Origin: Auanema rhodensis
Lineage: Eukaryota > Animalia > Nematoda
Length of the DNA stretch: 64,000 nt
Direction: 5' to 3'
Assembly (NCBI GenBank): GCA_964057225.1
Contig: OZ059899.1
Span: 12,400,001 to 12,464,000 of the forward strand
Under the pieces are notes generated by a model that searched no databases, was not told where the DNA came from, and was given only the letters and a program-made list of their open reading frames with translations. Below, in pieces: positions 1 to 35,705 of the stretch. The stretch's first letter is position 1; every line of letters starts with the position of its first letter. The translations under genes and the position numbers were made by a program.

Positions 1-1
1 C

Positions 2-2720: not shown

Positions 2721-2723
2721 ATT

Positions 2724-2973: not shown

Positions 2974-3018
<45 letters not shown>

Positions 3019-3084: not shown

Positions 3085-3164
3085 CTTTTATTATATAAAA
3101 CATTTTGATATATACGAAGGGTCGATCGGGATCATTTGAGCATCAAGAGTTTCAACAGACAACA

Positions 3165-3246
3165 GGTGAGATGGCCGAGCGGTCTAAGGCGCTGGTTTAA
3201 GGCACCAGTCTCTTCGGAGGCGTGGGTTCGAATCCCACTCTCATCA
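3165..3246 (+). tRNA. tRNA-Leu(AAG), first copy (representative)
   Basis: Cloverleaf: acceptor GGTGAGA/TCTCATC plus discriminator A; D arm GCC-GAGCGGTCTAA-GGC; anticodon stem CTGGT/ACCAG with loop TT-AAG-GC; long variable arm CTC-TTCG-GAG; T arm GTGGG-TTCGAAT-CCCAC; TTTT terminator 6 nt downstream. Confidence 0.98.
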
Positions 3247-3580
3247 GAATCCTTTTATTATATAAAATATTTTGTTATCTACGAAGGGTCGACAAGAACC
3301 ATTTGAGCATCAAGAGTTTCAACTGACAACAGGTGAGATGGCCGAGCGGTCTAAGGCGCTGGTTTAAGGCACCAGTCTCTTCGGAGGCGTGGGTTCGAAT
3401 CCCACTCTCATCAGAGTCCTTTTATTATATAAAACATTTTGATATCTACGAAGGGTCGACAAGAACCATTTGAGCATCAAGAGTTTCAACAGACAACAGG
3501 TGAGATGGCCGAGCGGTCTAAGGCGCTGGTTTAAGGCACCAGTCTCTTCGGAGGCGTGGGTTCGAATCCCACTCTCATCA
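3165..3580 (+). tRNA. tRNA-Leu(AAG) block 1, 3 copies
   Basis: Starts at 3165, 3332, 3499. Confidence 0.96.
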
Positions 3581-3599
3581 GAATCCTTTTATTATATAA

Positions 3600-4438
3600 C
3601 GTTCCGTTATGCTCCTGCGTCGATAATATAAACCATTGTAGTTTATACCATGACGCGAATAGTATTCCTTGGTGTAGCGGTAAGAATACAGAGCATAAGG
3701 TCAATCATAAGATAAAAGAGAGAAAGATTTATTGACATGAAACTACAACAATAATATACAAAGATAAAGATACATTACAATAAGATAAATAAAAGTATAG
3801 AGACTAAACTACAAGCCGTCCATGAGCTTGCTAAGAGGCGAACTCCCGACCAAGGGAACGAGGGAAGGCGGAGCCATTCCTCGGTCCTCTGGTCGTCTGG
3901 CTCTAACCCTTCAGCTACATACAGTCCTGTGCGAAATAGTTGGGACACTCACTAGAAACCCTTGTACCTTCTCAGACAAACTACAAAAATTCAGAAAAAA
4001 TATATTTTGGGTGTTAAAAAACGATAATGAATTCAGAAAAAATCTTCAAAATTTTAAAAATCATGTTGAAAAGTATTTTCTGAAGTCTTGAATCTATGCC
4101 ATAGGAAAAACTTGGTTATTGATCGAGCTCTGTGCTCAGAATGATTTAAAGATATTTTTAATAAATTAACTTGTTTCTAATCTCAAATTTTGTTATATTA
4201 AGAAGGATTATTCAAAATAGTCAAAAAACACTATTTTTCCTTATAAATTTAGAAATCTCATTGAAATCAGTTTTCATTATATTAACATATATTTTGACTG
4301 AATATAAACTAAACGCAAAATGTTTGAAATTAAAAAAAAAATTTTTTTTGTAGTTTGAAGGGGAATTCTGGGGCCTCTAACATAGGGGTGTCCCAACTAT
4401 TTCGCACAGGACTGTATATGGGGAGTCCGAATAGACCG
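3600..4438. mobile_element. Unclassified 344-bp insertion element, copy 1 (with nested MITE)
   Basis: Interrupts the spacer with ATAA duplicated on both sides; CGTTCCGTT...AATAGACCG termini. Confidence 0.75.
3922..4414. mobile_element. Tc1/mariner-type MITE (493 bp), copy 1
   Basis: Perfect 27-bp TIR CAGTCCTGTGCGAAATAGTTGGGACAC; TA target duplication confirmed against the empty sites near 24967 and 31501; AT-rich non-coding interior. Confidence 0.92.
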
Positions 4439-4508
4439 ATAAAATTTTTTGATATATACGAAGGGTCGACAAGAACCATTTGAGCATCAAGAGTTTCAAC
4501 TGACAACA

Positions 4509-7500
4509 GGTGAGATGGCCGAGCGGTCTAAGGCGCTGGTTTAAGGCACCAGTCTCTTCGGAGGCGTGGGTTCGAATCCCACTCTCATCAGAATCCTTTT
4601 ATTGTATAAAACATTTTGATATATACGAAGTGTCGACAAGAACCATTTGAGCATCAAGAGTTTCAACTGACAACAGGTGAGATGGCCGAGCGGTCTAAGG
4701 CGCTGGTTTAAGGCACCAGTCTCTTCGGAGGCGTGGGTTCGAATCCCACTCTCATCAGAATCCTTTTATTATATAAAACATTTTGATATATACGAAGGGT
4801 CGATCGGGATCATTTGAGCATCAAGAGTTTCAACAGACAACAGGTGAGATGGCCGAGCGGTCTAAGGCGCTGGTTTAAGGCACCAGTCTCTTCGGAGGCG
4901 TGGGTTCGAATCCCACTCTCATCAGAATCCTTTTATTATATAAAATATTTTGTTATCTACGAAGGGTCGACAAGAACCATTTGAGCATCAAGAGTTTCAA
5001 CTGACAACAGGTGAGATGGCCGAGCGGTCTAAGGCGCTGGTTTAAGGCACCAGTCTCTTCGGAGGCGTGGGTTCGAATCCCACTCTCATCAGAATCCTTT
5101 TATTATATAAAACATTTTGATATATACGAAGGGTCGACAAGAACCATTTAGGCATCAAGAGTTTCAACAGACAACAGGTGAGATGGCCGAGCGGTATAAG
5201 GCGCTGGTTTAAGGCACCAGTCTCTTCGGAGGCGTGGGTTCGAATCCCACTCTCATTTATTGTAAAAAACATTTTGATATATACGAAGGGTCGATCGGGA
5301 TCATTTGATTATCAAGAGTTTCAACTGACAACAGGTGAGATGGCCGAGCGGTCTAAGGCGCTGGTTTAAGGCACCAGTCTCTTCGGAGGCGTGGGTTCGA
5401 ATCCCACTCTCATCAGAATCCTTTTATTATATAAAACATTTTGTTATATACGAAGTGTCGACAAGAACCATTTGAGCTTTAAGAGTTTCAACAGACAACA
5501 GGTGAGATGGCCGAGCGGTCTAAGGCGCTGGTTTAAGGCACCAGTCTCTTCGGAGGCGTGGGTTCGAATCCCACTCTCATCAGAATCCTTTTATTGTATA
5601 AAACATTTTGATATATACGAAGGGTCGACAAGAACCATTTGAGCATCAAGAGTTTCAACAGACAACAGGTGAGATGGCCGAGCGGTCTAAGGCGCTGGTT
5701 TAAGGCACCAGTCTCTTCGGAGGCGTGGGTTCGAATCCCACTCTCATCAGAATCCTTTTATTATATAAAACATTTTGTTATATACGAAGTGTCGACAAGA
5801 ACCATTTGAGCATCAAGAGTTTCAACAGACAACAGGTGAGATGGCCGAGCGGTCTAAGGCGCTGGTTTAAGGCACCAGTCTCTTCGGAGGCGTGGGTTCG
5901 AATCCCACTCTCATCAGAATCCTTTTATTGTATAAAACATTTTGATATATACGAAGGGTCGACAAGAACCATTTGAGCATCAAGAGTTTCAACAGACAAC
6001 AGGTGAGATGGCCGAGCGGTCTAAGGCGCTGGTTTAAGGCACCAGTCTCTTCGGAGGCGTGGGTTCGAATCCCACTCTCATCAGAATCCTTTTATTGTAT
6101 AAAACATTTTGATATATACGAAGGGTCGACAAGAACCATTTGAGCATCAAGAGTTTCAACAGACAACAGGTGAGATGGCCGAGCGGTCTAAGGCGCTGGT
6201 TTAAGGCACCAGTCTCTTCGGAGGCGTGGGTTCGAATCCCACCCTCATCAGAATCCTTTTATTGTATAAAACATTTTGATATATACGAAGGGTCGATCGA
6301 GATCATTTGATTATCAAGAGTTTCAACAGATAACAGGTGAGATGGCCGAGCGGTCTAAGGCGCTGGTTTAAGGCACCAGTATCTTCGGAGGCGTGGGTTC
6401 GAATCCCACTCTCATCAGAATCCTTTTATTATATAAAACATTTTGATATATACGAAGGGTCGACAAGAACCATTTGAGCATCAAGAGTTTCAACAGACAA
6501 CAGGTGAGATGGCCGAGCGGTCTAAGGCGCTGGTTTAAGGCACCAGTCTCTTCGGAGGCGTGGGTTCGAATCCCACTCTCATCAGAATCCTTTTATTGTA
6601 TAAAACATTTTGATATATACGAAGGGTCGACAAGAACCATTTGAGCATCAAGAGTTTCAACAGACAACAGGTGAGATGGCCGAGCGGTCTAAGGCGCTGG
6701 TTTAAGGCACCAGTCTCTTCGGAGGCGTGGGTTCGAATCCCACCCTCATCAGAATCCTTTTATTGTATAAAACATTTTGATATATACGAAGGGTCGATCG
6801 AGATCATTTGATTATCAAGAGTTTCAACAGATAACAGGTGAGATGGCCGAGCGGTCTAAGGCGCTGGTTTAAGGCACCAGTATCTTCGGAGGCGTGGGTT
6901 CGAATCCCACTCTCATCAGAATCCTTTTATTATATAAAACATTTTGATATATACGAAGGGTCGACAAGAACCATTTGAGCATCAAGAGTTTCAACAGACA
7001 ACAGGTGAGATGGCCGAGCGGTCTAAGGCGCTGGTTTAAGGCACCAGTCTCTTCGGAGGCGTGGGTTCGAATCCCACTCTCATCAGAATCCTTTTATTGT
7101 ATAAAACATTTTGATATATACGAAGGGTCGACAAGAACCATTTGAGCTTTAAGAGTTTCAACAGACAACAGGTGAGATGGCCGAGCGGTCTAAGGCGCTG
7201 GTTTAAGGCACCAGTCTCTTCGGAGGCGTGGGTTCGAATCCCACTCTCATCAGAATCCTTTTATTGTATAAAACATTTTGATATATACGAAGGGTCGACA
7301 AGAACCATTTGAGCTTCAAGAGTTTCAACAGACAACAGGTGAGATGGCCGAGTGGTCTAAGGCGCTGGTTTAAGGCACCAGTCTCTTCGGAGGCGTGGGT
7401 TCGAATCCCACTCTCATCAGAATCCTTTTATTGTATAAAACATTTTGATATATACGAAGGGTCGACAAGAACCATTTGAGCATCAAGAGTTTCAACAGAC

Positions 7501-10500
7501 AACAGGTGAGATGGCCGAGCGGTCTAAGGCGCTGGTTTAAGGCACCAGTCTCTTCGGAGGCGTGGGTTCGAATCCCACTCTCATCAGAATCCTTTTATTA
7601 TATAAAACATTTTGTTATATACGAAGTGTCGACAAGAACCATTTGAGCATCAAGAGTTTCAACAGACAACAGGTGAGATGGCCGAGCGGTCTAAGGCGCT
7701 GGTTTAAGGCACCAGTCACTTCGGAGGCGTGGGTTCGAATCCCACTCTCATCAGAATCCTTTTATTGTATAAAACATTTTGATATATACGAAGGGTCGAC
7801 AAGAACCATTTGAGCATCAAGAGTTTCAACAGACAACAGGTGAGATGGCCGAGCGGTCTAAGGCGCTGGTTTAAGGCACCAGTCTCTTCGGAGGCGTGGG
7901 TTCGAATCCCACTCTCATCAGAATCCTTTTATTATATAAAACATTTTGTTATATACGAAGTGTCGACAAGAACCATTTGAGCATCAAGAGTTTCAACAGA
8001 CAACAGGTGAGATGGCCGAGCGGTCTAAGGCGCTGGTTTAAGGCACCAGTCTCTTCGGAGGCGTGGGTTCGAATCCCACTCTCATCAGAATCCTTTTATT
8101 GTATAAAACATTTTGATATATACGAAGGGTCGACAAGAACCATTTGAGCATCAAGAGTTTCAACAGACAACAGGTGAGATGGCCGAGCGGTCTAAGGCGC
8201 TGGTTTAAGGCACCAGTCTCTTCGGAGGCGTGGGTTCGAATCCCACTCTCATCAGAATCCTTTTATTGTATAAAACATTTTGATATATACGAAGGGTCGA
8301 CAAGAACCATTTGAGCTTTAAGAGTTTCAACAGACAACAGGTGAGATGGCCGAGCGGTCTAAGGCGCTGGTTTAAGGCACCAGTCTCTTCGGAGGCGTGG
8401 GTTCGAATCCCACTCTCATCAGAATCCTTTTATTGTATAAAACATTTTGATATATACGAAGGGTCGATCGAGATCATTTGATTATCAAGAGTTTCAACAG
8501 ATAACAGGTGAGATGGCCGAGCGGTCTAAGGCGCTGGTTTAAGGCACCAGTATCTTCGGAGGCGTGGGTTCGAATCCCACTCTCATCAGAATCCTTTTAT
8601 TATATAAAACATTTTGATATATACGAAGGGTCGACAAGAACCATTTGAGCATCAAGAGTTTCAACAGACAACAGGTGAGATGGCCGAGCGGTCTAAGGCG
8701 CTGGTTTAAGGCACCAGTCTCTTCGGAGGCGTGGGTTCGAATCCCACTCTCATCAGAATCCTTTTATTGTATAAAACATTTTGATATATACGAAGGGTCG
8801 ACAAGAACCATTTGAGCTTTAAGAGTTTCAACAGACAACAGGTGAGATGGCCGAGCGGTCTAAGGCGCTGGTTTAAGGCACCAGTCTCTTCGGAGGCGTG
8901 GGTTCGAATCCCACTCTCATCAGAATCCTTTTATTGTATAAAACATTTTGATATATACGAAGGGTCGACAAGAACCATTTGAGCTTCAAGAGTTTCAACA
9001 GACAACAGGTGAGATGGCCGAGTGGTCTAAGGCGCTGGTTTAAGGCACCAGTCTCTTCGGAGGCGTGGGTTCGAATCCCACTCTCATCAGAATCCTTTTA
9101 TTATATAAAACATTTTGATATATACGAAGGGTCGACAAGAACCATTTGAGCATCAAGAGTTTCAACAGACAACAGGTGAGATGGCCGAGCGGTCTAAGGC
9201 GCTGGTTTAAGGCACCAGTCTCTTCGGAGGCGTGGGTTCGAATCCCACTCTCATCAGAATCCTTTTATTGTATAAAACATTTTGATATATACGAAGGGTC
9301 GATCGGGATCATTTGATTATCAAGAGTTTCAACAGACAACAGGTGAGATGGCCGAGCGGTCTAAGGCGCTGGTTTAAGGCACCAGTCTCTTCGGAGGCGT
9401 GGGTTCGAATATCACTCTCATCAGAATCCTTTTATTATATAAAACATTTTGATATATACGAAGGGTCGACAAGAACCATTTGAGCATCAAGAGTTTCAAC
9501 TGACAACAGGTGAGATGGCCGAGCGGTCTAAGGCGCTGGTTTAAGGCACCAGTCTCTTCGGAGGCGTGGGTTCGAATCCCACTCTCATCAGAATCCTTTT
9601 ATTGTATAAAACATTTTGATATATACGAAGGGTCGACAAGAACCATTTGAGCTTTAAGAGTTTCAACAGACAACAGGTGAGATGGCCGAGCGGTCTAAGG
9701 CGCTGGTTTAAGGCACCAGTCTCTTCGGAGGCGTGGGTTCGAATCCCACTCTCATCAGAGTCCTTTTATTATATAAAACATTTTGATATCTACGAAGGGT
9801 CGACAAGAACCATTTGAGCATCAAGAGTTTCAACAGACAACAGGTGAGATGGCCGAGCGGTCTAAGGCGCTGGTTTAAGGCACCAGTCTCTTCGGAGGCG
9901 TGGGTTCGAATCCCACTCTCATCAGAATCCTTTTATTATATAAAACATTTTGATATATACGGAGGGTCGACAAGAACCATTTGAGCTTCAAGAGTTTCAA
10001 CAGACAACAGGTGAGATGGCCGAGTGGTCTAAGGCGCTGGTTTAAGGCACCAGTCTCTTCGGAGGCGTGGGTTCGAATCCCACTCTCATCAGAATCCTTT
10101 TATTGTATAAAACATTTTGATATATACGAAGGGTCGACAAGAACCATTTGAGCATCAAGAGTTTCAACAGACAACAGGTGAGATGGCCGAGCGGTCTAAG
10201 GCGCTGGTTTAAGGCACCAGTCTCTTCGGAGGCGTGGGTTCGAATCCCACTCTCATCAGAATCCTTTTATTATATAAAACATTTTGATATATACGGAGGG
10301 TCGACAAGAACCATTTGAGCTTCAAGAGTTTCAACAGACAACAGGTGAGATGGCCGAGTGGTCTAAGGCGCTGGTTTAAGGCACCAGTCTCTTCGGAGGC
10401 GTGGGTTCGAATCCCACTCTCATCAGAATCCTTTTATTGTATAAAACATTTTGATATATACGAAGGGTCGATCGAGATCATTTGATTATCAAGAGTTTCA

Positions 10501-13500
10501 ACAGACAACAGGTGAGATGGCCGAGCGGTCTAAGGCGCTGGTTTAAGGCACCAGTCTCTTCGGAGGCGTGGGTTCGAATCCCACTCTCATCAGAATCCTT
10601 TTATTATATAAAACATTTTGATATATACGAAGGGTCGACAAGAACCATTTGAGCATCAAGAGTTTCAACAGACAACAGGTGAGATGGCCGAGCGGTCTAA
10701 GGCGCTGGTTTAAGGCACCAGTCTCTTCGGAGGCGTGGGTTCGAATCCCACTCTCATCAGAATCCTTTTATTGTATAAAACATTTTGATATATACGAAGG
10801 GTCGACAAGAACCATTTGAGCATCAAGAGTTTCAACAGACAACAGGTGAGATGGCCGAGCGGTCTAAGGCGCTGGTTTAAGGCACCAGTCTCTTCGGAGG
10901 CGTGGGTTCGAATCCCACTCTCATCAGAATCCTTTTATTATATAAAACATTTTGATATATACGAAGGGTCGACAAGAACCATTTGAGCTTCAAGAGTTTC
11001 AACAGACAACAGGTGAGATGGCCGAGTGGTCTAAGGCGCTGGTTTAAGGCACCAGTCTCTTCGGAGGCGTGGGTTCGAATCCCACTCTCATCAGAATCCT
11101 TTTATTATATAAAACATTTTGATATATACGAAGGGTCGACAAGAACCATTTGAGCATCAAGAGTTTCAACAGACAACAGGTGAGATGGCCGAGCGGTCTA
11201 AGGCGCTGGTTTAAGGCACCAGTCTCTTCGGAGGCGTGGGTTCGAATCCCACTCTCATCAGAATCCTTTTATTGTATAAAACATTTTGATATATACGAAG
11301 GGTCGACAAGAACCATTTGAGCATCAAGAGTTTCAACAGACAACAGGTGAGATGGCCGAGCGGTCTAAGGCGCTGGTTTAAGGCACCAGTCTCTTCGGAG
11401 GCGTGGGTTCGAATCCCACTCTCATCAGAATCCTTTTATTATATAAAACATTTTGTTATATACGAAGTGTCGACAAGAACCATTTGAGCATCAAGAGTTT
11501 CAACAGACAACAGGTGAGATGGCCGAGCGGTCTAAGGCGCTGGTTTAAGGCACCAGTCTCTTCGGAGGCGTGGGTTCGAATCCCACTCTCATCAGAATCC
11601 TTTTATTGTATAAAACATTTTGATATATACGAAGGGTCGACAAGAACCATTTGAGCATCAAGAGTTTCAACAGACAACAGGTGAGATGGCCGAGCGGTCT
11701 AAGGCGCTGGTTTAAGGCACCAGTCTCTTCGGAGGCGTGGGTTCGAATCCCACTCTCATCAGAATCCTTTTATTGTATAAAACATTTTGATATATACGAA
11801 GGGTCGACAAGAACCATTTGAGCATCAAGAGTTTCAACAGACAACAGGTGAGATGGCCGAGCGGTCTAAGGCGCTGGTTTAAGGCACCAGTCTCTTCGGA
11901 GGCGTGGGTTCGAATCCCACTCTCATCAGAATCCTTTTATTGTATAAAACATTTTGATATATACGAAGGGTCGATCGAGATCATTTGATTATCAAGAGTT
12001 TCAACAGATAACAGGTGAGATGGCCGAGCGGTCTAAGGCGCTGGTTTAAGGCACCAGTCTCTTCGGAGGCGTGGGTTCGAATCCCACTCTCATCAGAATC
12101 CTTTTATTATATAAAACATTTTGATATATACGAAGGGTCGACAAGAACCATTTGAGCATCAAGAGTTTCAACAGACAACAGGTGAGATGGCCGAGCGGTC
12201 TAAGGCGCTGGTTTAAGGCACCAGTCTCTTCGGAGGCGTGGGTTCGAATCCCACTCTCATCAGAATCCTTTTATTGTATAAAACATTTTGATATATACGA
12301 AGGGTCGACAAGAACCATTTGAGCATCAAGAGTTTCAACAGACAACAGGTGAGATGGCCGAGCGGTCTAAGGCGCTGGTTTAAGGCACCAGTCTCTTCGG
12401 AGGCGTGGGTTCGAATCCCACTCTCATCAGAATCCTTTTATTATATAAAACATTTTGATATATACGAAGGGTCGACAAGAACCATTTGAGCTTCAAGAGT
12501 TTCAACAGACAACAGGTGAGATGGCCGAGTGGTCTAAGGCGCTGGTTTAAGGCACCAGTCTCTTCGGAGGCGTGGGTTCGAATCCCACTCTCATCAGAAT
12601 CCTTTTATTATATAAAACATTTTGATATATACGAAGGGTCGACAAGAACCATTTGAGCATCAAGAGTTTCAACAGACAACAGGTGAGATGGCCGAGCGGT
12701 CTAAGGCGCTGGTTTAAGGCACCAGTCTCTTCGGAGGCGTGGGTTCGAATCCCACTCTCATCAGAATCCTTTTATTATATAAAACATTTTGTTATATACG
12801 AAGTGTCGACAAGAACCATTTGAGCATCAAGAGTTTCAACAGACAACAGGTGAGATGGCCGAGCGGTCTAAGGCGCTGGTTTAAGGCACCAGTCTCTTCG
12901 GAGGCGTGGGTTCGAATCCCACTCTCATCAGAATCCTTTTATTGTATAAAACATTTTGATATATACGAAGGGTCGACAAGAACCATTTGAGCATCAAGAG
13001 TTTCAACAGACAACAGGTGAGATGGCCGAGCGGTCTAAGGCGCTGGTTTAAGGCACCAGTCTCTTCGGAGGCGTGGGTTCGAATCCCACTCTCATCAGAA
13101 TCCTTTTATTGTATAAAACATTTTGATATATACGAAGGGTCGACAAGAACCATTTGAGCATCAAGAGTTTCAACAGACAACAGGTGAGATGGCCGAGCGG
13201 TCTAAGGCGCTGGTTTAAGGCACCAGTCTCTTCGGAGGCGTGGGTTCGAATCCCACTCTCATCAGAATCCTTTTATTGTATAAAACATTTTGATATATAC
13301 GAAGGGTCGATCGAGATCATTTGATTATCAAGAGTTTCAACAGATAACAGGTGAGATGGCCGAGCGGTCTAAGGCGCTGGTTTAAGGCACCAGTCTCTTC
13401 GGAGGCGTGGGTTCGAATCCCACTCTCATCAGAATCCTTTTATTATATAAAACATTTTGATATATACGAAGGGTCGACAAGAACCATTTGAGCATCAAGA

Positions 13501-22449: not shown

Positions 22450-22468
22450 GAATCCTTTTATTATATAA

Positions 22469-23306: not shown

Positions 23307-23376
23307 ATAAAATTTTTTGATATATACGAAGGGTCGACAAGAACCATTTGAGCATCAAGAGTTTCAACTGACAACA

Positions 23377-24627: not shown

Positions 24628-24646
24628 GAATCCTTTTATTACATAA

Positions 24647-24990: not shown

Positions 24991-25060
24991 ATAAAATATT
25001 TTGATATATACGAAGGGTCGACAAGAACCATTTGAGCATCAAGAGTTTCAACAGACAACA

Positions 25061-25643: not shown

Positions 25644-25662
25644 GAATCCTTTTATTATATAA

Positions 25663-26500
25663 CGTTCCGTTATGCTCCTGCGTCGATAATATAAACCATT
25701 GTAGTTTATACCATGACGCGAATAGTATTCCTTGGTGTAGCGGTAAGAATACAGAGCATAAGGTCAATCATAAGATAAAAGAGAGAAAGATTTATTGACA
25801 TGAAACTACAACAATAATATACAAAGATAAAGATACATTACAATAAGATAAATAAAAGTATAGAGACTAAACTACAAGCCGTCCATGAGCTTGCTAAGAG
25901 GCGAACTCCCGACCAAGGGAACGAGGGAAGGCGGAGCCATTCCTCGGTCCTCTGGTCGTCTGGCTCTAACCCTTCAGCTACATACAGTCCTGTGCGAAAT
26001 AGTTGGGACACTCACTAGAAACCCTTGTACCTTCTCAGACAAACTACAAAAATTCAGAAAAAATATATTTTGGGTGTTAAAAAACGATAATGAATTCAGA
26101 AAAAATCTTCAAAATTTTAAAAATCATGTTGAAAAGTATTTTCTGAAATCTTGAATCTATGCCATAGGAAAAACTTGGTTATTGATCGAGCTCTGTGCTC
26201 AGAATGATTTAAAGATATTTTTAATAAATTAACTTGTTTCTAATCTCAAATTTTGTTATATTAAGAAGGATTATTCAAAATAGTCAAAAAACACTATTTT
26301 TCCTTATAAATTTAGAAATCTCATTGAAATCAGTTTTCATTATATTAACATATATTTTGACTGAATATAAACTAAACGCAAAATGTTTGAAATTAAAAAA
26401 AAATTTTTTTTGTAGTTTGAAGGGGAATTCTGGGGCCTCTAACATAGGGGTGTCCCAACTATTTCGCACAGGACTGTATATGGGGAGTCCGAATAGACCG
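25663..26500. mobile_element. Unclassified insertion element, copy 4 (with nested MITE)
   Basis: Near-identical to copy 2, offset 3194 bp. Confidence 0.75.
25985..26476. mobile_element. Tc1/mariner-type MITE (492 bp), copy 3
   Basis: Same 27-bp TIRs and TA flanks. Confidence 0.92.
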
Positions 26501-26570
26501 ATAAAATTTTTTGATATATACGAAGGGTCGACAAGAACCATTTGAGCATCAAGAGTTTCAACTGACAACA

Positions 26571-29500
26571 GGTGAGATGGCCGAGCGGTCTAAGGCGCTG
26601 GTTTAAGGCACCAGTCTCTTCGGAGGCGTGGGTTCGAATCCCACTCTCATCAGAATCCTTTTATTATATAAAACATTTTGATATATACGAAGTGTCGACA
26701 AGAACCATTTGAGCATCAAGAGTTTCAACTGACAACAGGTGAGATGGCCGAGCGGTCTAAGGCGCTGGTTTAAGGCACCAGTCTCTTCGGAGGCGTGGGT
26801 TCGAATCCCACTCTCATCAGAATCCTTTTATTATATAAAACATTTTGATATATACGAAGTGTCGACAAGAACCATTTGAGCATCAAGAGTTTCAACTGAC
26901 AACAGGTGAGATGGCCGAGCGGTCTAAGGCGCTGGTTTAAGGCACCAGTCTCTTCGGAGGCGTGGGTTCGAATCCCACTCTCATCAGAATCCTTTTATTA
27001 TATAAAACATTTTGATATATACGAAGTGTCGACAAGAACCATTTGAACATCAAGAGTTTCAACTGACAACAGGTGAGATGGCCGAGCGGTCTAAGGCGCT
27101 GGTTTAAGGCACCAGTCTCTTCGGAGGCGTGGGTTCGAATCCCACTCTCATCAGAATCCTTTTATTGTATAAAACATTTTGATATATACGAAGTGTTGAC
27201 AAGATCCATTTGAGTATCAAGAGTTTCAACAGAGAACAGGTGAGATGGCCGAGCAGTCTAAGGCGCTGGTTTAAGGCACCAGTCTCTTCGGAGGCGTGGG
27301 TTCGAATCCCACTCTCATCAGAATCCTTTTATTATATAAAACATTTTGATATATACGAAGTGTCGACAAGAACCATTTGAACATCAAGAGTTTCAACTGA
27401 CAACAGGTGAGATGGCCGAGCGGTCTAAGGCGCTGGTTTAAGGCACCAGTCTCTTCGGAGGCGTTGGTTCGAATATCACTCTCATCAGAATCCTTTTATT
27501 GTATAAAACATTTTGATATCTACGAAGGGTCGACAAGAACCATTTGAGCATCAAGAGTTTCAACAGACAACAGGTGAGATGGCCGAGCGGTCTAAGGCGC
27601 TGGTTTAAGGCACCAGTCTCTTCGGAGGCGTGGGTTCGAATCCCACTCTCATCAGAATCCTTTTATTATATAAAACATTTTGATATATACGAAGTGTCGA
27701 CAAGAACCATTTGAGCATCAAGAGTTTCAACTGACAACAGGTGAGATGGCCGAGCGGTCTAAGGCGCTGGTTTAAGGCACCAGTCTCTTCGGAGGCGTGG
27801 GTTCGAATCCCACTCTCATCAGAATCCTTTTATTATATAAAACATTTTGATATATACGAAGTGTCGACAAGAACCATTTGAACATCAAGAGTTTCAACTG
27901 ACAACAGGTGAGATGGCCGAGCGGTCTAAGGCGCTGGTTTAAGGCACCAGTCTCTTCGGAGTCGTGGGTTCGAATCCCACTCTCATCAGAATCCTTTTAT
28001 TGTATAAAACATTTTGATATATACGAAGTGTTGACAAGATCCATTTGAGTATCAAGAGTTTCAACAGAGAACAGGTGAGATGGCCGAGCGGTCTAAGGCG
28101 CTGGTTTAAGGCACCAGTCTCTTCGGAGGCGTGGGTTCGAATCCCACTCTCATCAGAATCCTTTTATTATATAAAACATTTTGATATATACGAAGTGTCG
28201 ACAAGAACCATTTGAGCATCAAGAGTTTCATTAGACAACAGGTGAGATGGCCGAGCGGTCTAAGGCGCTGGTTTAAGGCACCAGTCTCTTCGGAGGCGTG
28301 GGTTCGAATCCCACTCTCATCAGAATTCTTTTATTGTATAAAACATTTTGATATATACGAAGTGTCGACAAGAACCATTTGAGTATCAAGAGTTTCAACA
28401 GAGAACAGGTGAGATGGCCGAGCGGTCTAAGACGCTGGTTTAAGGCACCAGTCTCTTCGGAGGCGTGGGTTCGAATCCCACTCTCATCAGAATCCTTTTA
28501 TTGTATAAAACATTTTGATATATACGAAGTGTTGACAAGATCCATTTGAGTATCAAGAGTTTCAACAGAGAACAGGTGAGATGGCCGAGCGGTCTAAGGC
28601 GCTTGTTTAAGGCACCAGTCTCTTCGGAGGCGTGGGTTCGAATATCACTCTCATCAGAATCCTTTTATTGTATAAAATATTTTGATATATACGAAGGGTC
28701 GACAAGAACCATTTGAGCATCAAGAGTTTCAACAGACAACAGGTGAGATGGCCGAGCGGTCTAAGGCGCTGGTTTAAGGCACCAGTCTCTTCGGAGGCGT
28801 GGGTTCGAATCCCACTCTCATCAGAATCCTTTTATTGTATAAAACATTTTGATATCTACGAAGGGTCGACAAGAACCATTTGAGCATCAAGAGTTTCAAC
28901 AGACAACAGGTGAGATGGCCGAGCGGTCTAAGGCGCTGGTTTAAGGCACCAGTCTCTTCGGAGGCGTGGGTTCGAATCCCACTCTCATCAGAATCCTTTT
29001 ATTATATAAAACATTTTGATATATACGAAGTGTCGACAAGAACCATTTGATTATCAAGAGTTTCAACAGACAACAGGTGAGATGGCCGAGCGGTCTAAGG
29101 CGCTGGTTTAAGGCACCAGTCTCTTCGGAGGCGTGGGTTCGAATATCACTCTCATCAGAATCCTTTTATTGTATAAAATATTTTGATATATACGAAGTGT
29201 TGACAAGATCCATTTGAGTATCAAGAGTTTCAACTGACAACAGGTGAGATGGCCGAGCGGTCTAAGGCGCTGGTTTAAGGCACCAGTCTCTTCGGAGGCG
29301 TGGGTTCGAATCCCACTCTCATCAGAATCCTTTTATTATATAAAACATTTTGATATATACGAAGTGTCGACAAGAACCATTTGAGCATCAAGAGTTTCAA
29401 CTGACAACAGGTGAGATGGCCGAGCGGTCTAAGGCGCTGGTTTAAGGCACCAGTCTCTTCGGAGGCGTGGGTTCGAATCCCACTCTCATCAGAATCCTTT

Positions 29501-31161
29501 TATTATATAAAACATTTTGATATATACGAAGTGTCGACAAGAACCATTTGAACATCAAGAGTTTCAACTGACAACAGGTGAGATGGCCGAGCGGTCTAAG
29601 GCGCTGGTTTAAGGCACCAGTCTCTTCGGAGTCGTGGGTTCGAATCCCACTCTCATCAGAATCCTTTTATTGTATAAAACATTTTGATATATACGAAGTG
29701 TTGACAAGATCCATTTGAGTATCAAGAGTTTCAACAGAGAACAGGTGAGATGGCCGAGCGGTCTAAGGCGCTGGTTTAAGGCACCAGTCTCTTCGGAGGC
29801 GTGGGTTCGAATCCCACTCTCATCAGAATCCTTTTATTATATAAAACATTTTGATATATACGAAGTGTCGACAAGAACCATTTGAGCATCAAGAGTTTCA
29901 TTAGACAACAGGTGAGATGGCCGAGCGGTCTAAGGCGCTGGTTTAAGGCACCAGTCTCTTCGGAGGCGTGGGTTCGAATCCCACTCTCATCAGAATTCTT
30001 TTATTGTATAAAACATTTTGATATATACGAAGTGTCGACAAGAACCATTTGAGTATCAAGAGTTTCAACAGAGAACAGGTGAGATGGCCGAGCGGTCTAA
30101 GACGCTGGTTTAAGGCACCAGTCTCTTCGGAGGCGTGGGTTCGAATCCCACTCTCATCAGAATCCTTTTATTGTATAAAACATTTTGATATATACGAAGT
30201 GTTGACAAGATCCATTTGAGTATCAAGAGTTTCAACAGAGAACAGGTGAGATGGCCGAGCGGTCTAAGGCGCTGGTTTAAGGCACCAGTCTCTTCGGAGG
30301 CGTGGGTTCGAATCCCACTCTCATCAGAATCCTTTTATTATATAAAACATTTTGATATATACGAAGTGTCGACAAGAACCATTTGAGCATCAAGAGTTTC
30401 ATTAGACAACAGGTGAGATGGCCGAGCGGTCTAAGGCGCTGGTTTAAGGCACCAGTCTCTTCGGAGGCGTGGGTTCGAATCCCACTCTCATCAGAATTCT
30501 TTTATTGTATAAAACATTTTGATATATACGAAGTGTCGACAAGAACCATTTGAACATCAAGAGTTTCAACTGACAAGAGGTGAGATGGCCGAGCGGTCTA
30601 AGGCGCTGGTTTAAGGCACCAGTCTCTTCGGAGGCGTGGGTTCGAATCCCACTCTCATCAGAATCCTTTTATTGTATAAAACATTTTGATATATACGAAG
30701 TGTCGACAAGAACCATTTGAGCATCAAGAGTTTCAACAGACAACAGGTGAGATGGCCGAGCGGTCTAAGGCGCTGGTTTAAGGCAACAGTCTCTTCGGAG
30801 GCGTGGGTTCGAATCCCACTCTCATCAGAATCCTTTTATTATATAAAACATTTTGATATATACGAAGGGTCGACAAGAACCATTTGAGCATCAAGAGTTT
30901 CAACAGAGAACAGGTGAGATGGCCGAGCGGTCTAAGACGCTGGTTTAAGGCACCAGTCTCTTCGGAGGCGTGGGTTCGAATCCCACTCTCATCAGAATCC
31001 TTTTATTGTATAAAATATTTTGATATATACGAAGGGTCGACAAGAACCATTTGAGCATCAAGAGTTTCAACAGACAACAGGTGAGATGGCCGAGCGGTCT
31101 AAGACGCTGGTTTAAGGCACCAGTCTCTTCGGAGGCGTGGGTTCGAATCCCACTCTCATCA
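26571..31161 (+). tRNA. tRNA-Leu(AAG) block 5, 28 copies
   Basis: Starts 26571 to 31080 at 167-bp spacing. Confidence 0.96.
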
Positions 31162-31180
31162 GAATCCTTTTATTACATAA

Positions 31181-31524
31181 CGTTCCGTTATGCTCCTGCG
31201 TCGATAATATAAACCATTGTAGTTTATACCATGACGCGAATAGTATTCCTTGGTGTAGCGGTAAGAATACAGAGCATAAGGTCAATCATAAGATAAAAGA
31301 GAGAAAGATTTATTGACATGAAACTACAACAATAATATACAAAGATAAAGATACATTACAATAAGATAAATAAAAGTATAGAGACTAAACTACAAGCCGT
31401 CCATGAGCTTGCTAAGAGGCGAACTCCCGACCAAGGGAACGAGGGAAAGCGGAGCCATTCCTCGGTCCTCTGGTCGTCTGGCTCTAACCCTTCAGCTACA
31501 TATATGGGGAGTCCGAATAGACCG
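31181..31524. mobile_element. Unclassified 344-bp insertion element, copy 5 (MITE-free)
   Basis: ATAA-flanked; empty MITE site; shares diagnostic variants with copy 3. Confidence 0.75.
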
Positions 31525-31594
31525 ATAAAATATTTTGATATATACGAAGGGTCGACAAGAACCATTTGAGCATCAAGAGTTTCAACAGACAACA

Positions 31595-34500
31595 GGTGAG
31601 ATGGCCGAGCGGTCTTAGGCGCTGGTTTAAGGCACCAGTCTCTTCGGAGGCGTGGGTTCGAATCCCACTCTCATCAGAATTCTTTTACGATATAAAACAT
31701 TTCGATATCTATGAAGTGTCGACAAGAACCATTTGAGCATCAAGAGTGTCAACAGACAACAGGTGAGATGGCCGAGCGGTCTTAGGCGCTGGTTTAAGGC
31801 ACCAGTCTCTTCGGAGGCGTGGGTTCGAATCCCACTCTCATCAGAATCCTTTTATTATATAAAACATTTTGATATATACGAAGGATCGACAAGAACCATT
31901 TGAGCATCAAGAGTTTCAACAGACAACAGGTGAGATGGCCGAGCGGTCTTAGGCGCTGGTTTAAGGCACCAGTCTCTTCGGAGGCGTGGGTTCGAATCCC
32001 ACTCTCATCAGAATCCTTTTATTGTATAAAACATTTTGATATATACGAAGGGTCGATCGGGATCATTTGATTATCAAGAGTTTCAACAGACAACAGGTGA
32101 GATGGCCGAGCGGTCTTAGGCGCTGGTTTAAGGCACCAGTCTCTTCGGAGGCGTGGGTTCGAATCCCACTCTCATCAGAATCCTTTTATAGTATAAAACA
32201 TTTTGATATATACGAAGGGTCGATCGGGATCATTTGATTATCAAGAGTTTCAACAGACAACAGGTGAGATGGCCGAGCGGTCTAAGGCGCTGGTTTAAGG
32301 CACCAGTCTCTTCGGAGGCGTGGGTTCGAATATCACTCTCATCAGAATCCTTTTATTATATAAAACATTTTGATATATACGAAGGGTCGACAAGAACCAT
32401 TTGAGCATCAAGAGTTTCAACTGACAACAGGTGAGATGGCCGAGCGGTCTAAGGCGCTGGTTTAAGGCACCAGTCTCTTCGGAGGCGTGGGTTCGAATCC
32501 CACTCTCATCAGAATCCTTTTATTGTATAAAACATTTTGATATATACGAAGGGTCGACAAGAACCATTTGAGCTTTAAGAGTTTCAACAGACAACAGGTG
32601 AGATGGCCGAGCGGTCTAAGGCGCTGGTTTAAGGCACCAGTCTCTTCGGAGGCGTGGGTTCGAATATCACTCTCATCAGAATCCTTTTATTATATAAAAC
32701 ATTTTGATATATACGAAGGGTCGACAAGAACCATTTGAGCATCAAGAGTTTCAACTGACAACAGGTGAGATGGCCGAGCGGTCTAAGGCGCTGGTTTAAG
32801 GCACCAGTCTCTTCGGAGGCGTGGGTTCGAATCCCACTCTCATCAGAATCCTTTTATTGTATAAAACATTTTGATATATACGAAGGGTCGACAAGAACCA
32901 TTTGAGCTTTAAGAGTTTCAACAGACAACAGGTGAGATGGCCGAGCGGTCTAAGGCGCTGGTTTAAGGCACCAGTCTCTTCGGAGGCGTGGGTTCGAATC
33001 CCACTCTCATCAGAGTCCTTTTATTATATAAAACATTTTGATATCTACGAAAGGTCGACAAGAACCATTTGAGCATCAAGAGTTTCAACAGACAACAGGT
33101 GAGATGGCCGAGCGGTCTAAGGCGCTGGTTTAAGGCACCAGTCTCTTCGGAGGCGTGGGTTCGAATCCCACTCTCATCAGAATCCTTTTATTATATAAAA
33201 CATTTTGATATATACGAAGGGTCGACAAGAACCATTTGAGCATCAAGAGTTTCAACAGACAACAGGTGAGATGGCCGAGCGGTCTAAGGCGCTGGTTTAA
33301 GGCACCAGTCTCTTCGGAGGCGTGGGTTCGAATCCCACTCTCATCAGAGTCCTTTTATTATATAAAACATTTTGATATCTACGAAGGGTCGACAAGAACC
33401 ATTTGAGCATCAAGAGTTTCAACAGACAACAGGTGAGATGGCCGAGCGGTCTAAGGCGCTGGTTTAAGGCACCAGTCTCTTCGGAGGCGTGGGTTCGAAT
33501 CCCACTCTCATCAGAATCCTTTTATTATATAAAACATTTTGATATATACGAAGGGTCGACAAGAACCATTTGAGCATCAAGAGTTTCAACAGACAACAGG
33601 TGAGATGGCCGAGCGGTCTAAGGCGCTGGTTTAAGGCACCAGTCTCTTCGGAGGCGTGGGTTCGAATCCCACTCTCATCAGAATCCTTTTATTGTATAAA
33701 ACATTTTGATATATACGAAGTGTTGACAAGATCCATTTGAGTATCAAGAGTTTCAACAGAGAACAGGTGAGATGGCCGAGCGGTCTAAGGCGCTGGTTTA
33801 AGGCACCAGTCTCTTCGGAGGCGTGGGTTCGAATCCCACTCTCATCAGAATCCTTTTATTGTATAAAACATTTTGATATATACGAAGTGTTGACAAGATC
33901 CCTTTGAGTATCAAGAGTTTCAACAGAGAACAGGTGAGATGGCCGAGCGGTCTAAGGCGCTGGTTTAAGGCACCAGTCTCTTCGGAGGCGTGGGTTCGAA
34001 TCCCACTCTCATCAGAATCCTTTTATTATATAAAACATTTTGATATATACGAAGTGTCGACAAGAACCATTTGAACATCAAGAGTTTCAACTGACAACAG
34101 GTGAGATGGCCGAGCGGTCTAAGGCGCTGGTTTAAGGCACCAGTCTCTTCGGAGGCGTGGGTTCGAATCCCACTCTCATCAGAATCCTTTTATTATATAA
34201 AACATTTTGATATATACGAAGTGTCGACAAGAACCATTTGAACATCAAGAGTTTCAACTGACAACAGGTGAGATGGCCGAGCGGTCTAAGGCGCTGGTTT
34301 AAGGCACCAGTCTCTTCGGAGGCGTGGGTTCGAATCCCACTCTCATCAGAATCCTTTTATTGTATAAAACATTTTGATATATACGAAGTGTTGACAAGAT
34401 CCATTTGAGTATCAAGAGTTTCAACAGAGAACAGGTGAGATGGCCGAGCGGTCTAAGGCGCTGGTTTAAGGCACCAGTCTCTTCGGAGGCGTGGGTTCGA

Positions 34501-34682
34501 ATCCCACTCTCATCAGAATCCTTTTATTATATAAAACATTTTGATATATACGAAGGATCGACAAGAACCATTTGAGCATCAAGAGTTTCAACAGACAACA
34601 GGTGAGATGGCCGAGCGGTCTAAGGCGCTGGTTTAAGGCACCAGTCTCTTCGGAGGCGTGGGTTCGAATCCCACTCTCATCA
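31595..34682 (+). tRNA. tRNA-Leu(AAG) block 6, 19 copies
   Basis: Starts 31595 to 34601 at 167-bp spacing. Confidence 0.96.
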
Positions 34683-34701
34683 GAATCCTTTTATTATATA
34701 A

Positions 34702-34738
34702 CGTTCCGTTATGCTCCTGCGTCGAAACAAAGATAAAG
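34702..34738. other. Truncated remnant of the 344-bp element at the array inversion junction
   Basis: First 24 bp of the element, then ACAAAGATAAAG (an internal piece of the same element), then inverted tRNA sequence. Confidence 0.75.
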
Positions 34739-34833
34739 CCATCTCACCTGTTTTCAGCTGAAACTCTTGATGCTCAAATGGTTCTTGTCGACACTTCATA
34801 GATATCGAAATGTTTTATATCGTAAAAGAATTC

Positions 34834-35583
34834 TGATGAGAGTGGGATTCGAACCCACGCCTCCGAAGAGACTGGTGCCTTAAACCAGCGCCTTAGACCG
34901 CTCGGCCATCTCACCTGTTTTCAGCTGAAACTCTTGATGCTCAAATGGTTCTTGTCGACACTTCATAGATATCAAAATGTTTTATATCGTAAAAGAATTC
35001 TGATGAGAGTGGGATTCGAACCCACGCCTCCGAAGAGACTGGTGCCTTAAACCAGCGCCTTAGACCGCTCGGCCATCTCACCTGTTTTCACCTGAAACTC
35101 TTGATGCTCAAATGGTTCTTGTCGACACTTCATAGATATCAAAATGTTTTATATCGTAAAAGAATTCTGATGAGAGTGGGATTCGAACCCACGCCTCCGA
35201 AGAGACTGGTGCCTTAAACCAGCGCCTTAGACCGCTCGGCCATCTCACCTGTTTTCAGCTGAAACTCTTGATGCTCAAATGGTTCTTGTCGACCCTTCGT
35301 ATATATCAAAATGTTTTATATAATAAAAGGATTCTGATGAGAGTGATATTCGAACCCACGCCTCCGAAGAGACTGGTGCCTTAAACCAGCGCCTTAGACC
35401 GCTCGGCCATCTCACCTGTTGTCTGTTGAAACTCTTAAAGCTCAAATGGTTCTTGTCGACCCTTCGTATATATCAAAATGTTTTATACAATAAAAGGATT
35501 CTGATGAGAGTGGGATTCGAACCCACGCCTCCGAAGAGACTGGTGCCTTAAACCAGCGCCTTAGACCGCTCGGCCATCTCACC
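34834..35583 (-). tRNA. tRNA-Leu(AAG) inverted block, 5 copies
   Basis: Reverse-complement copies at 34834-34915, 35001-35082, 35168-35249, 35335-35416, 35502-35583. Confidence 0.96.
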
Positions 35584-35668
35584 TATTTTCAGCTGAAACT
35601 CTTGATGCTCAAATGGTTCTTGCTGACACATCGTAGATATCGAAATGTTTTATATCGTAAAAGAATTC

Positions 35669-35705
35669 TGATGAGTGGGATTCGAACCCACGCCTCCGAA
35701 GAGAC
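35669..35705 (-). pseudogene. Truncated tRNA-Leu (3' half only) at the array edge
   Basis: Only variable arm, T arm and a 2-nt-deleted acceptor strand remain before unique sequence starts. Confidence 0.85.

What the first reader, a model, noticed from the sequence alone, without database searches (positions are those of the whole stretch)
3085..35705. Satellite-like mega-array of ~175 intact tRNA-Leu(AAG) genes with a 167-bp period
Seen: one tRNA isoacceptor repeated head-to-tail for more than 32 kb, each with A/B boxes, full cloverleaf and its own TTTT terminator; I saw no copy with an altered anticodon, and variation concentrates in the spacer. Established: nematode tRNA genes are usually dispersed, with tens of copies per isoacceptor, and 167 bp is about one nucleosome plus a short linker, like many satellites. 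Inference: the copy number probably exceeds translational need, so the array may serve a chromosomal role (TFIIIC/condensin platform, insulator, pairing or segregation site) or supply tRNA fragments. The array likely continues left of the retrotransposon.
Basis: partly seen in the sequence, partly recalled or inferred. Interest (0 to 1): 0.85.

Follow-up and report, generated by a model that had tools for sequence, protein, structure and literature searches.

The report
Giant leucine tRNA gene array
A roundworm chromosome (almost certainly Auanema rhodense) carries a real string of 392 near-identical leucine tRNA genes, 175 of them in this window; it looks like an over-amplified set of working genes, and it is one of many such arrays that a 2026 preprint on this genome mentions in outline.

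Summary
ARAGORN finds 175 tRNA-Leu(AAG) genes at 3165-35583 with a 167-bp period, and every anticodon is AAG.

Corrections:
- The last five genes are inverted.
- Five transposon-derived inserts interrupt the array.
- 28 of the 175 genes carry a substitution that breaks a stem pair.

The window holds the right part of one 95.5-kb array of 392 units (C7:12,340,2xx-12,435,705), which lies between the talin/PSAT-like genes and the CAD gene.

The genome is Auanema rhodense: the 180.9-Mb assembly size matches, and the preprint's X-chromosome FISH probes hit thousands of times. That preprint (10.64898/2026.08.27.747507) counts 19,554 tRNA genes and mentions tRNA arrays in passing. This scan has already found many sister arrays on other DNA.

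New here:
- The gene part is about ten times less variable than the spacer. No gene variant reaches 5% frequency, against 16 spacer variants.
- An identical gene body sits in a second array with an unrelated 177-bp unit and mixed AAG/TAG anticodons.
- Few copies appear outside the two arrays. Only about four isolated loci were listed, in truncated tables.
- No elimination motif lies near the array, so it is probably kept in body cells.
- Four separate retroelement insertions cluster just after the genes.

Best reading: an amplified Pol III gene array kept uniform by short-patch copying plus selection. Expression and read depth could not be tested. I found no evidence for a chromosomal role.

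The parts
1..3084 (.). 3' part of a 9.76-kb LTR retrotransposon (TG...CA ends) inserted in the array. Its target duplication CTTTT lies in the Pol III terminator run of the unit to its left.
   Evidence: Junction sequences. The array resumes at 3085 and continues beyond the element on the left.
3085..3599 (+). Three 167-bp units with tRNA-Leu(AAG) genes at 3165, 3332 and 3499.
3600..4438 (+). Solo LTR (344 bp, target duplication ATAA, 19 nt after the gene's 3' end) carrying a nested 493-bp Tc1-like MITE at 3922-4414 (inverted ends CAGTCCTGTGCG..., TA duplication).
   Evidence: The LTR is 96.8% identical to both LTRs of the full-length 11.9-kb element at C7:12,358,247-12,370,104.
4439..22468 (+). 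108 units in an uninterrupted run. This is the most homogeneous block. It includes one irregular copy (5176-5259, with a 2-nt insertion in the gene and a 10-bp shorter unit).
22469..23310 (+). Second copy of the solo LTR with MITE, at the same spacer site.
   Evidence: 0 mismatches to the other MITE-bearing copies over the 322-nt LTR part.
23311..24646 (+). Eight units (genes 23377-24627).
24647..24990 (+). Solo LTR without the MITE (344 bp).
24991..25662 (+). Four units (genes 25061-25643).
25663..26504 (+). Third copy in the window of the solo LTR with MITE.
26505..31180 (+). 28 units (genes 26571-31161).
31181..31524 (+). Solo LTR without the MITE (344 bp).
31525..34701 (+). 19 units (genes 31595-34682).
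34702..34738 (.). Inversion junction: the first 24 nt of the solo LTR and 13 nt of filler. It is followed by the first 10 nt of an inverted gene.
   Evidence: Sequence read, compared with the LTR start.
34739..35705 (-). Inverted terminal block: five complete genes (34834-35583) and a truncated, 3-nt-deleted gene at the array's right edge. These units are the most diverged, with up to 13 of 167 differences from the majority sequence.
35990..41100 (-). 3' part of the CAD (pyr-1-type) gene. It begins about 300 bp from the array edge and is used as evidence that the array lies in gene-rich, somatically retained DNA.
   Evidence: ORFs. Pfam OTCace_N at 1e-34 and CPSase_L_D2 at 9e-14.

Best explanation
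The window holds the right 45% of a single 95.5-kb tandem array of 392 tRNA-Leu(AAG) genes on an autosome of Auanema rhodense. Each 167-bp unit is a self-contained Pol III gene with internal A and B boxes, an 82-nt class II cloverleaf and a T4 terminator 6 nt downstream. The array arose when one gene and about 85 bp of its flank were amplified at the DNA level. It is kept uniform by frequent short-patch copying between units (gene conversion or unequal exchange over 1-2 kb). Variants in the gene part are prevented from spreading. Together with a second array 3.6 Mb away, it provides most of the genome's copies of this major leucine isoacceptor. It lies between housekeeping genes with no elimination signal nearby, so it is most likely kept in body cells and not discarded during programmed DNA elimination. 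Shown: anatomy, copy number in the assembly, the variation pattern, patch copying and gene context. Inferred: transcription, selection as the cause of the low gene diversity, and retention in the soma.
For: 1. Gene anatomy. There are 175 ARAGORN calls, all with anticodon AAG. Rfam tRNA scores are 41.6-58.4 bits against a 29-bit threshold. The A-box and B-box matches and the CTTTT run are present in nearly all 392 units.

2. Constraint over the whole array. Pi is 0.0074 in the gene and 0.077 in the spacer. Segregating sites number 31 of 82 in the gene and 79 of 85 in the spacer (Fisher p = 1e-14). Variant counts, gene versus spacer, by frequency class:
- singletons: 17 vs 27 (not significant)
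- 2-3 copies: 11 vs 53
- 4-9 copies: 6 vs 18
- 10-19 copies: 3 vs 10
- 20 or more copies: 0 vs 16
The depletion in the gene grows with frequency, as expected if gene variants arise but cannot spread.

3. The same 82-nt gene is the majority sequence in array B, whose spacer is unrelated (177-bp unit, T6 terminator), and in the isolated copies.

4. The genome has about 648 exact AAG anticodon arms and 884 gene bodies at up to 3 mismatches. 776 of the 884 lie in the two stretches I could read, and only about 4 isolated loci were listed. The arrays therefore appear to be the main source of this tRNA. CUU+CUC make up 42% of 189 Leu codons in flanking ORFs.

5. Ongoing homogenisation. Five copies of a solo LTR with a nested MITE are spread over 37 kb. 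They are identical over the 322-nt LTR part. The identity extends only 0.2-1 kb beyond the insert. Neighbouring units are no more alike than distant ones.

6. Context. Talin lies on the left, and CAD, a weak RPLP1-type match and an ABC transporter lie on the right. No elimination-motif-like sequence or telomere repeat occurs in the 144 kb around the array. The nearest such motif on this contig is at 8.816 Mb, and its longer telomere seed points towards the array side.

7. Species and background.
Against: Selection on any one of several hundred copies should be very weak. Among the changed genes, stem sites carry 27 variants against 10 at unpaired sites, and only 5 units have a stem change that still pairs against 58 with a broken pair. 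Damaged copies therefore decay freely. Part of the gene/spacer contrast could come from old spacer differences between a few founder units that were later amplified.

In Arabidopsis, clustered tandem tRNA genes are largely silenced (PMC7544208), so intact sequence does not prove activity.

[quoted passage not shown] My case for retention rests on gene context and the absence of a motif. I located only two of the four expected break sites on this contig.
Confidence: 0.6

Rival explanations
1. The array is a mostly silent, satellite-like expansion. A tRNA gene and its flank were amplified by the same processes that build satellites in this repeat-rich genome. Most units are packaged in repressive chromatin, as in the Arabidopsis tRNA clusters. 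The genes look intact because amplification and patch copying are recent, not because the copies are used.
For: Singleton variants are almost as dense in the gene as in the spacer (17 of 82 vs 27 of 85 sites, p = 0.12). 15% of units have a broken stem pair and there is no sign of compensatory change. The array tolerates four retroelement insertions and an inversion. The copy number is very large: the genome has 19,554 tRNA genes, roughly 30 times my recollection of the C. elegans count (recalled, not tested). Arabidopsis precedent: PMC7544208.
Against: No gene variant reaches 5% frequency while 16 spacer variants do. Variants at intermediate frequency are 3-5 times rarer per site in the gene. 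Patch copying acts on whole units, so it cannot alone spare the gene. Few copies of this major isoacceptor were seen outside the arrays. The gene body stays identical across two arrays with unrelated spacers.
Confidence: 0.27
2. The array has a chromosomal role. It would act as a TFIIIC/condensin platform, an insulator between neighbouring genes, or a pairing or segregation site, with tRNA output secondary.
For: Hundreds of B boxes lie in a row, about 300 bp from the 3' end of CAD. tRNA genes and TFIIIC sites act as boundaries in yeast and human; a human tRNA tandem repeat was proposed as a boundary (PMC4041453).
Against: Nothing in the sequence requires it. The period is not shared by sister arrays: 167 vs 177 bp here, and 208 and 264 bp in other arrays. 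Arrays for many different tRNAs are scattered over the chromosomes, with no fixed position relative to chromosome landmarks in what I saw. The constraint covers the whole gene, including the acceptor and anticodon arms, not only the A and B boxes.
Confidence: 0.06
3. The copy number is an assembly artefact, with units over-expanded or mis-joined.
For: I could not lay reads on it. Two runs of exactly 108 units and two of exactly 28 units occur in the array, which looked at first like a duplicated assembly path.
Against: The equal-length runs are not copies of each other. In register they differ by 5.9 mismatches per unit, the same as out of register. There are 127 distinct unit sequences among the 392, and the insertions are unique. 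The region has no Ns. The array sits inside a 21.5-Mb contig with unique genes on both sides. The assembly is PacBio HiFi with a contig N50 of 16.4 Mb, and its authors report that most reads map uniquely in repeats.
Confidence: 0.05

Closest known systems
tRNA gene arrays of Auanema rhodense as reported in the 2026 preprint on programmed DNA elimination (10.64898/2026.08.27.747507)
   Same: Same genome: 180.9 Mb, and the FISH probes match. The preprint counts 19,554 tRNA genes, of which only 215 are pseudogenes, and says that some tandem repeats are arrays of 5S rRNA, several tRNA loci and U2.
   Different: The preprint mentions the arrays in one sentence, in the context of germline-restricted repeats, and states an RNA-gene density always below 20% per 10 kb. 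This array is 49% tRNA gene by length (82 of 167 bp). It sits between housekeeping genes with no break motif nearby. Its unit anatomy, variation pattern, insertions and sister array are not described there.
Arabidopsis thaliana clustered tRNA genes (the Ser-Tyr-Tyr and Pro clusters on chromosome 1; PMC7544208, PMC12308677)
   Same: Tandemly repeated, sequence-intact Pol III tRNA genes far in excess of the dispersed set. Whether they are used is an open question.
   Different: The Arabidopsis clusters have tens of units, a larger and partly heterotypic unit, lie in heterochromatin, and are silenced by DNA methylation. Here there are 392 homotypic units of 167 bp in a gene-rich arm, and few dispersed copies that could do the work instead.
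Xenopus laevis 3.18-kb tDNA repeat and Entamoeba histolytica tRNA arrays (my own knowledge, not checked here)
   Same: Tandem amplification of tRNA genes to hundreds of copies, with concerted evolution of the units.
   Different: Those units carry several different tRNA genes each. Here each unit holds one gene and the unit is close to the minimum possible length.
5S rDNA tandem arrays
   Same: Short Pol III gene plus spacer, hundreds of head-to-tail copies, a conserved gene part, a fast-evolving spacer, and homogenisation by unequal exchange and conversion.
   Different: A different gene and promoter type. 5S arrays are the ancestral arrangement in most animals, whereas tRNA arrays of this size are unusual in nematodes.
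Human 1q23.3 tRNA variable-number tandem repeat (PMC4041453)
   Same: A copy-number-variable tandem repeat carrying tRNA genes, proposed to have a boundary role.
   Different: Its unit is 7.3 kb with 9-43 copies, several tRNA genes and CTCF sites. No such extra element is seen in the 85-bp spacer here.

Membership tests
Eukaryotic nuclear tRNA-Leu gene (class II tRNA, type 2 Pol III promoter) | Cloverleaf with a long variable arm and a Leu anticodon | tested here: met
   ARAGORN of 175 as Leu(AAG). Rfam RF00005 scores are 41.6-58.4 bits. The fold shows the acceptor, variable and T arms.
Eukaryotic nuclear tRNA-Leu gene (class II tRNA, type 2 Pol III promoter) | Internal A box (positions 8-18) and B box (GGTTCGAATCC, positions 61-71) | tested here: met
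   Read directly in the majority gene sequence. 48 of 392 units carry a change inside one of the boxes.
Eukaryotic nuclear tRNA-Leu gene (class II tRNA, type 2 Pol III promoter) | Run of at least 4 T shortly after the 3' end | tested here: met
   GAATC|CTTTTATT is present in almost all units.
Eukaryotic nuclear tRNA-Leu gene (class II tRNA, type 2 Pol III promoter) | Transcribed by Pol III and processed to mature tRNA | not testable with these tools
Tandem tRNA gene array evolving in concert | Head-to-tail units each holding a tRNA gene, over many copies | tested here: met
   392 units with a 167-bp period: 387 on the + strand and 5 inverted at the right end.
Tandem tRNA gene array evolving in concert | Evidence of sequence transfer between units | tested here: met
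   Five copies of a solo LTR with a nested MITE are identical over the 322-nt LTR part. The shared identity covers only 1-2 flanking units. Multi-unit duplications of 11-12 units are also present.
Tandem tRNA gene array evolving in concert | Gene part conserved relative to the spacer | tested here: met
   Pi is 0.0074 vs 0.077; variants at 5% or higher number 0 vs 16.
Germline-restricted (eliminated) tandem repeat of A. rhodense | Lies on the eliminated side of a break-site motif, in a gene-poor satellite block | tested here: not met
The array is flanked within 0.3-2 kb by conserved genes. No motif-like site or telomere repeat occurs in 144 kb.
Non-coding satellite DNA | Tandem repeat without a functional gene, with mutations spread evenly over the unit | tested here: not met
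   Every unit holds a recognisable tRNA gene, and variation is strongly uneven across the unit.

The most novel reading that the evidence does not exclude
Auanema rhodense has rebuilt its tRNA gene set along the lines of ribosomal DNA. For tRNA-Leu(AAG), and by extension most isoacceptors, the usual scatter of single genes has been almost wholly replaced by isoacceptor-specific mega-arrays. At least some of these arrays stay in the somatic genome. They are the working source of the tRNA, are kept uniform by short-patch copying under selection, and serve as preferred landing sites for several retroelement families that insert within 20 nt of the Pol III terminator.
Probability: 0.4. Interest if true: 0.6.

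Novelty: new member of a known kind. Interest (0 to 1): 0.38.

Why it matters
Tandem tRNA gene arrays are known, and the huge tRNA gene count of this species is already in a preprint, so the array itself is not a discovery. It is still a clean, fully assembled case for two questions.

How can hundreds of redundant gene copies stay uniform when selection on each copy must be negligible? The frequency spectrum of variants in gene and spacer, and the marked insert that has been pasted to five places, give direct handles on this.

Are the arrays used? Few isolated copies of this major leucine tRNA gene were seen, and the array seems to stay in body cells, so deleting it is a feasible test.

The clustered retroelement insertions also offer an animal system for Pol III-directed integration.

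Tried and rejected

2. More genome sequence. The rest of array B (beyond 16.09 Mb) and the flanks of the isolated copies were not read.

3. Large duplication or assembly doubling. This was suggested by two runs of 108 units and two of 28. I rejected it: the runs are no more alike in register than out of register, and no long diagonal of shared unit types links them.

4. Break-site motif. I derived a 25-nt form (TAGGCTTAGGCKTATCCACTGCCTA) from recurrent hits. It finds 23 sites genome-wide, one of them on this contig (8,815,798, minus strand). A perfect-palindrome guess found nothing. The contig's other break sites were therefore not located, and the right-hand boundary of the retained arm is unknown.

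5. Literature searches for the source preprint led nowhere until. One paper read on the way (Cranifera) was irrelevant.

6. Nucleosome-length reading of the 167-bp period. Rejected, because sister arrays have other periods.

7. Edge-decay gradient. Only the inverted right-end units are clearly more diverged. Otherwise there is no gradient, and neighbours are no more similar than distant units.

Full report
**What is there**

ARAGORN finds 175 tRNA-Leu genes in the window, all with anticodon AAG. 170 are on the + strand (3165-34682) and five on the - strand (34834-35583). Tandem Repeats Finder reports a 167-bp period over 3085-3599, 4439-34701 and 34738-35705.

The unit consists of:
- an 82-nt class II tRNA gene, with an A box at positions 8-18 and a perfect B box (GGTTCGAATCC) at 61-71;
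- a 5-nt trailer, GAATC;
- the run CTTTTATT;
- an AT-rich spacer of about 75 nt.

All 111 copies that I scanned against Rfam pass the tRNA gathering score, at 41.6-58.4 bits against 29.

Four corrections apply. The last five genes are inverted. Five inserts interrupt the array. One copy has a 2-nt insertion. Only 124 of the 175 genes are identical: 22 differ in loops only, 1 has a stem change that still pairs, and 28 have a broken stem pair.

**Whose genome, and how much more**

The window is C7:12,400,001-12,464,000 of a 180,911,798-base assembly in 112 contigs. A 2026 preprint on Auanema rhodense describes a 180.9-Mb HiFi assembly with 19,554 annotated tRNA genes, and programmed elimination of about 61% of the germline genome from body cells. 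Its FISH probes for X-chromosome repeats match contig C8 exactly, about 2,500 and 25,000 times. The species is therefore settled, C8 is the X, and C7 is an autosome.

The preprint mentions tRNA arrays in one sentence. Earlier notes of this scan list sister arrays for Phe, Ala, Val, Arg, Asp, Trp and the other Leu isoacceptors. The phenomenon is thus not new, either in print or in this scan. I used those notes only as leads.

**The whole array**

With 80 kb fetched to the left, the array runs from C7:12,340,2xx to 12,435,705 and holds 392 units: 387 on the + strand and 5 on the - strand. All carry anticodon AAG.

On the left lie a talin gene and an ORF that looks like phosphoserine aminotransferase (no Pfam match). 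On the right, about 300 bp from the array edge, lies the 3' end of the CAD gene. It is followed by a ribosomal P1-type ORF (a weak match, below Pfam's cut-off) and an ABC transporter.

Both array edges are decayed genes:
- On the left, a unit with an internal deletion of roughly gene positions 19-44.
- On the right, an inverted gene truncated at position 44.

**Genome-wide picture for this gene**

The 82-nt gene body occurs 884 times at up to three mismatches. The exact AAG anticodon arm occurs 648 times. Almost all copies are on C7, in this array and in a second one at about 15.98-16.16 Mb. Only about four isolated loci were listed, although the hit tables were truncated.

The second array has an unrelated spacer, a 177-bp unit, a T6 terminator and blocks in both orientations. 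In the 120 kb I could read, it is a shuffled mix of 204 AAG, 177 TAG and 3 TAA anticodons on the same gene body. Against that background, the purity of the present array (392 of 392 AAG) is a real property of this array and not of the gene family.

In 2,125 codons of flanking ORFs, CUU and CUC make up 42% of leucine codons. This fits AAG being the major isoacceptor. The sample is small.

**Variation**

Over the 392 units, diversity and segregating sites differ sharply between gene and spacer:
- Nucleotide diversity is 0.0074 in the gene and 0.077 in the spacer.
- 31 of 82 gene sites vary, against 79 of 85 spacer sites (Fisher p = 1e-14).

The contrast grows with variant frequency:

| Copies carrying the variant | Gene variants | Spacer variants |
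|---|---|---|
| 1 | 17 | 27 (difference not significant) |
| 2-3 | 11 | 53 |
| 4-9 | 6 | 18 |
| 10-19 | 3 | 10 |
| 20 or more | 0 | 16 |

New changes thus arise in the gene nearly as often as in the spacer, but they do not spread.

Among changed genes, stems are hit more often than loops, and almost never in a way that preserves pairing. Damaged copies are therefore not being rescued; they simply stay rare.

Neighbouring units are no more alike than units 300 apart (6.6 vs 7.5 differences), which indicates a well-mixed array.

**How the mixing works**

All seven small inserts sit at the same spacer position, TATAA|CG...CG|ATAAAA, 19 nt after the gene. The 344-bp insert is a solo LTR. It is 96.8% identical to both LTRs of a full-length 11.9-kb element that lies in the array to the left. 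That element's own LTRs are identical to each other, 0 differences in 339 nt.

Five of the seven solo LTRs carry a 493-bp Tc1-like MITE at one identical internal position, so these five descend from one insertion. They are identical over the 322-nt LTR part and are spread over 37 kb. Yet the shared identity reaches only 0.2-0.3 kb to the left and 0.2-1 kb beyond the insert on the right.

This is direct evidence for recent copying of 1-2-kb patches between distant places in the array. Duplications of 11-12 units also occur. Because such copying moves whole units, it cannot by itself explain why the gene is ten times less variable than the spacer. Selection against arrays in which a gene variant has spread is the simplest reading. 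An alternative contribution is old spacer differences among a few founder units.

**Retained or eliminated**

The preprint places break sites at a 29-nt near-palindromic motif, and reports about 236-fold read depth in retained DNA against about 29-fold in eliminated DNA. I could not use reads.

From recurrent genome hits I derived a 25-nt form of the motif. It is absent, even allowing six mismatches, from the 144 kb around this array and from 120 kb of the second array. Telomere repeats are absent too.

The only hit on C7 is at 8,815,798. It is oriented like the hit at the left-hand satellite/gene border on C6, so I read the retained DNA as lying to its right (inference).

Essential genes lie on both sides, and the preprint says only 3% of genes are eliminated. 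I therefore judge the array retained in body cells with about 85% confidence. This is inference and was not measured.

**Other insertions**

Besides the solo-LTR lineage, three larger elements interrupt the array:
- the 11.9-kb element, with target duplication TTTT inside the terminator run;
- a 3.3-kb relative in reverse orientation, with duplication TATA, 52 nt before the next gene;
- a 9.76-kb element of another family (TG...CA ends), with duplication CTTTT, again in the terminator run. Its last 3,084 nt open this window.

That makes four independent integrations within a 35-nt stretch of the spacer, three of them within about 20 nt after the gene's 3' end. This suggests targeting of Pol III-bound genes, which would be indirect evidence that the units are occupied in the germline. 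An array that tolerates insertions could give the same picture.

**Verdict**

This is a real and very large tandem array of a working-type tRNA gene, and one member of a known kind. Tandem tRNA arrays are known in Arabidopsis (PMC7544208, PMC12308677) and human (PMC4041453); Xenopus and Entamoeba are cited from memory. The arrays in this species have been reported in outline.

I found no support for the nucleosome-period idea or for a chromosomal role.

The most useful new points are:
- the frequency-dependent constraint on the gene part;
- the marked-patch evidence for homogenisation;
- the scarcity of copies seen outside the two arrays;
- the likely somatic retention;
- the clustered retroelement insertions.

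Expression and true copy number remain untested.

Noticed in passing
C7:15,983,861-16,089,788 (loci L020-L030): A second array carries the same 82-nt gene body in an unrelated 177-bp unit, with blocks in both orientations. It is a shuffled mix of anticodons AAG (204), TAG (177) and TAA (3). The spacer majority sequence does not differ between the AAG and TAG units, so the anticodon base has been moved around by the same copying that homogenises the array.
   Followed up: partly
window 3600-4438, 22469-23310, 24647-24990, 25663-26504, 31181-31524; also C7:12,388,815 and 12,392,162: The '344-bp unclassified element' noted on this window is a solo LTR of the env-bearing 11.9-kb LTR element at C7:12,358,247-12,370,104 (96.8% identity). 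Five of the seven copies carry a nested 493-bp Tc1-like MITE with roughly 27-nt inverted ends, and these five are identical to one another over the 322-nt LTR part.
   Followed up: yes
window 1-3084 and C7:12,358,2xx, 12,374,8xx, 12,393,3xx: Four independent LTR-element integrations fall within a 35-nt stretch of the spacer. Two different families inserted into the Pol III terminator T run itself (target duplications TTTT and CTTTT). This is possibly Pol III-directed integration.
   Followed up: partly
window 34702-34738: The switch from + to - units runs through a solo LTR (only its first 24 nt remain), 13 nt of filler, and a gene cut at position 10. The inversion therefore happened after the LTR insertion.
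   Followed up: partly
C7:12,340,140-12,340,205 and window 35,640-35,705: Both outer edges of the array are decayed genes whose similarity to the tRNA resumes at about gene position 42-45 (GTCTCTTCGG...), in opposite orientations. The left one looks like a deletion between the short direct repeats GTCT at positions 18-21 and 44-47. It is unclear why both ends share this point.
   Followed up: no
C7:12,340,286-12,358,236 vs 12,404,509-12,422,449; 12,370,190-12,374,780 vs 12,426,571-12,431,161: Two uninterrupted runs of exactly 108 units and two of exactly 28 units occur in the same order, yet their units are no more alike in register than out of register. This is probably coincidence, and it is unexplained.
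   Followed up: yes
window 7338-21781 (15 copies): The commonest gene variant, C16T in the D loop and A box, scores higher against the Rfam tRNA model than the majority sequence (58.4 vs 56.8 bits). It moves the A box towards the general consensus and is likely harmless.
   Followed up: no
genome-wide: A 25-nt telomere-seeded motif (TAGGCTTAGGCKTATCCACTGCCTA) occurs 23 times at up to 3 mismatches, often as 2-4 tandem copies 29-35 nt apart (for example C6:15,352,732-15,352,855 and C5:15,930,005-15,930,087). Its strand correlates with which side carries genes. It appears to be the published elimination motif.
   Followed up: partly
preprint 10.64898/2026.08.27.747507, section 7: The preprint states that non-coding RNA loci always cover less than 20% of any 10-kb window. 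In this array tRNA genes cover 49% (82 of 167 bp) over tens of kilobases. Either their density track is computed differently or many copies were collapsed in their annotation.
   Followed up: no
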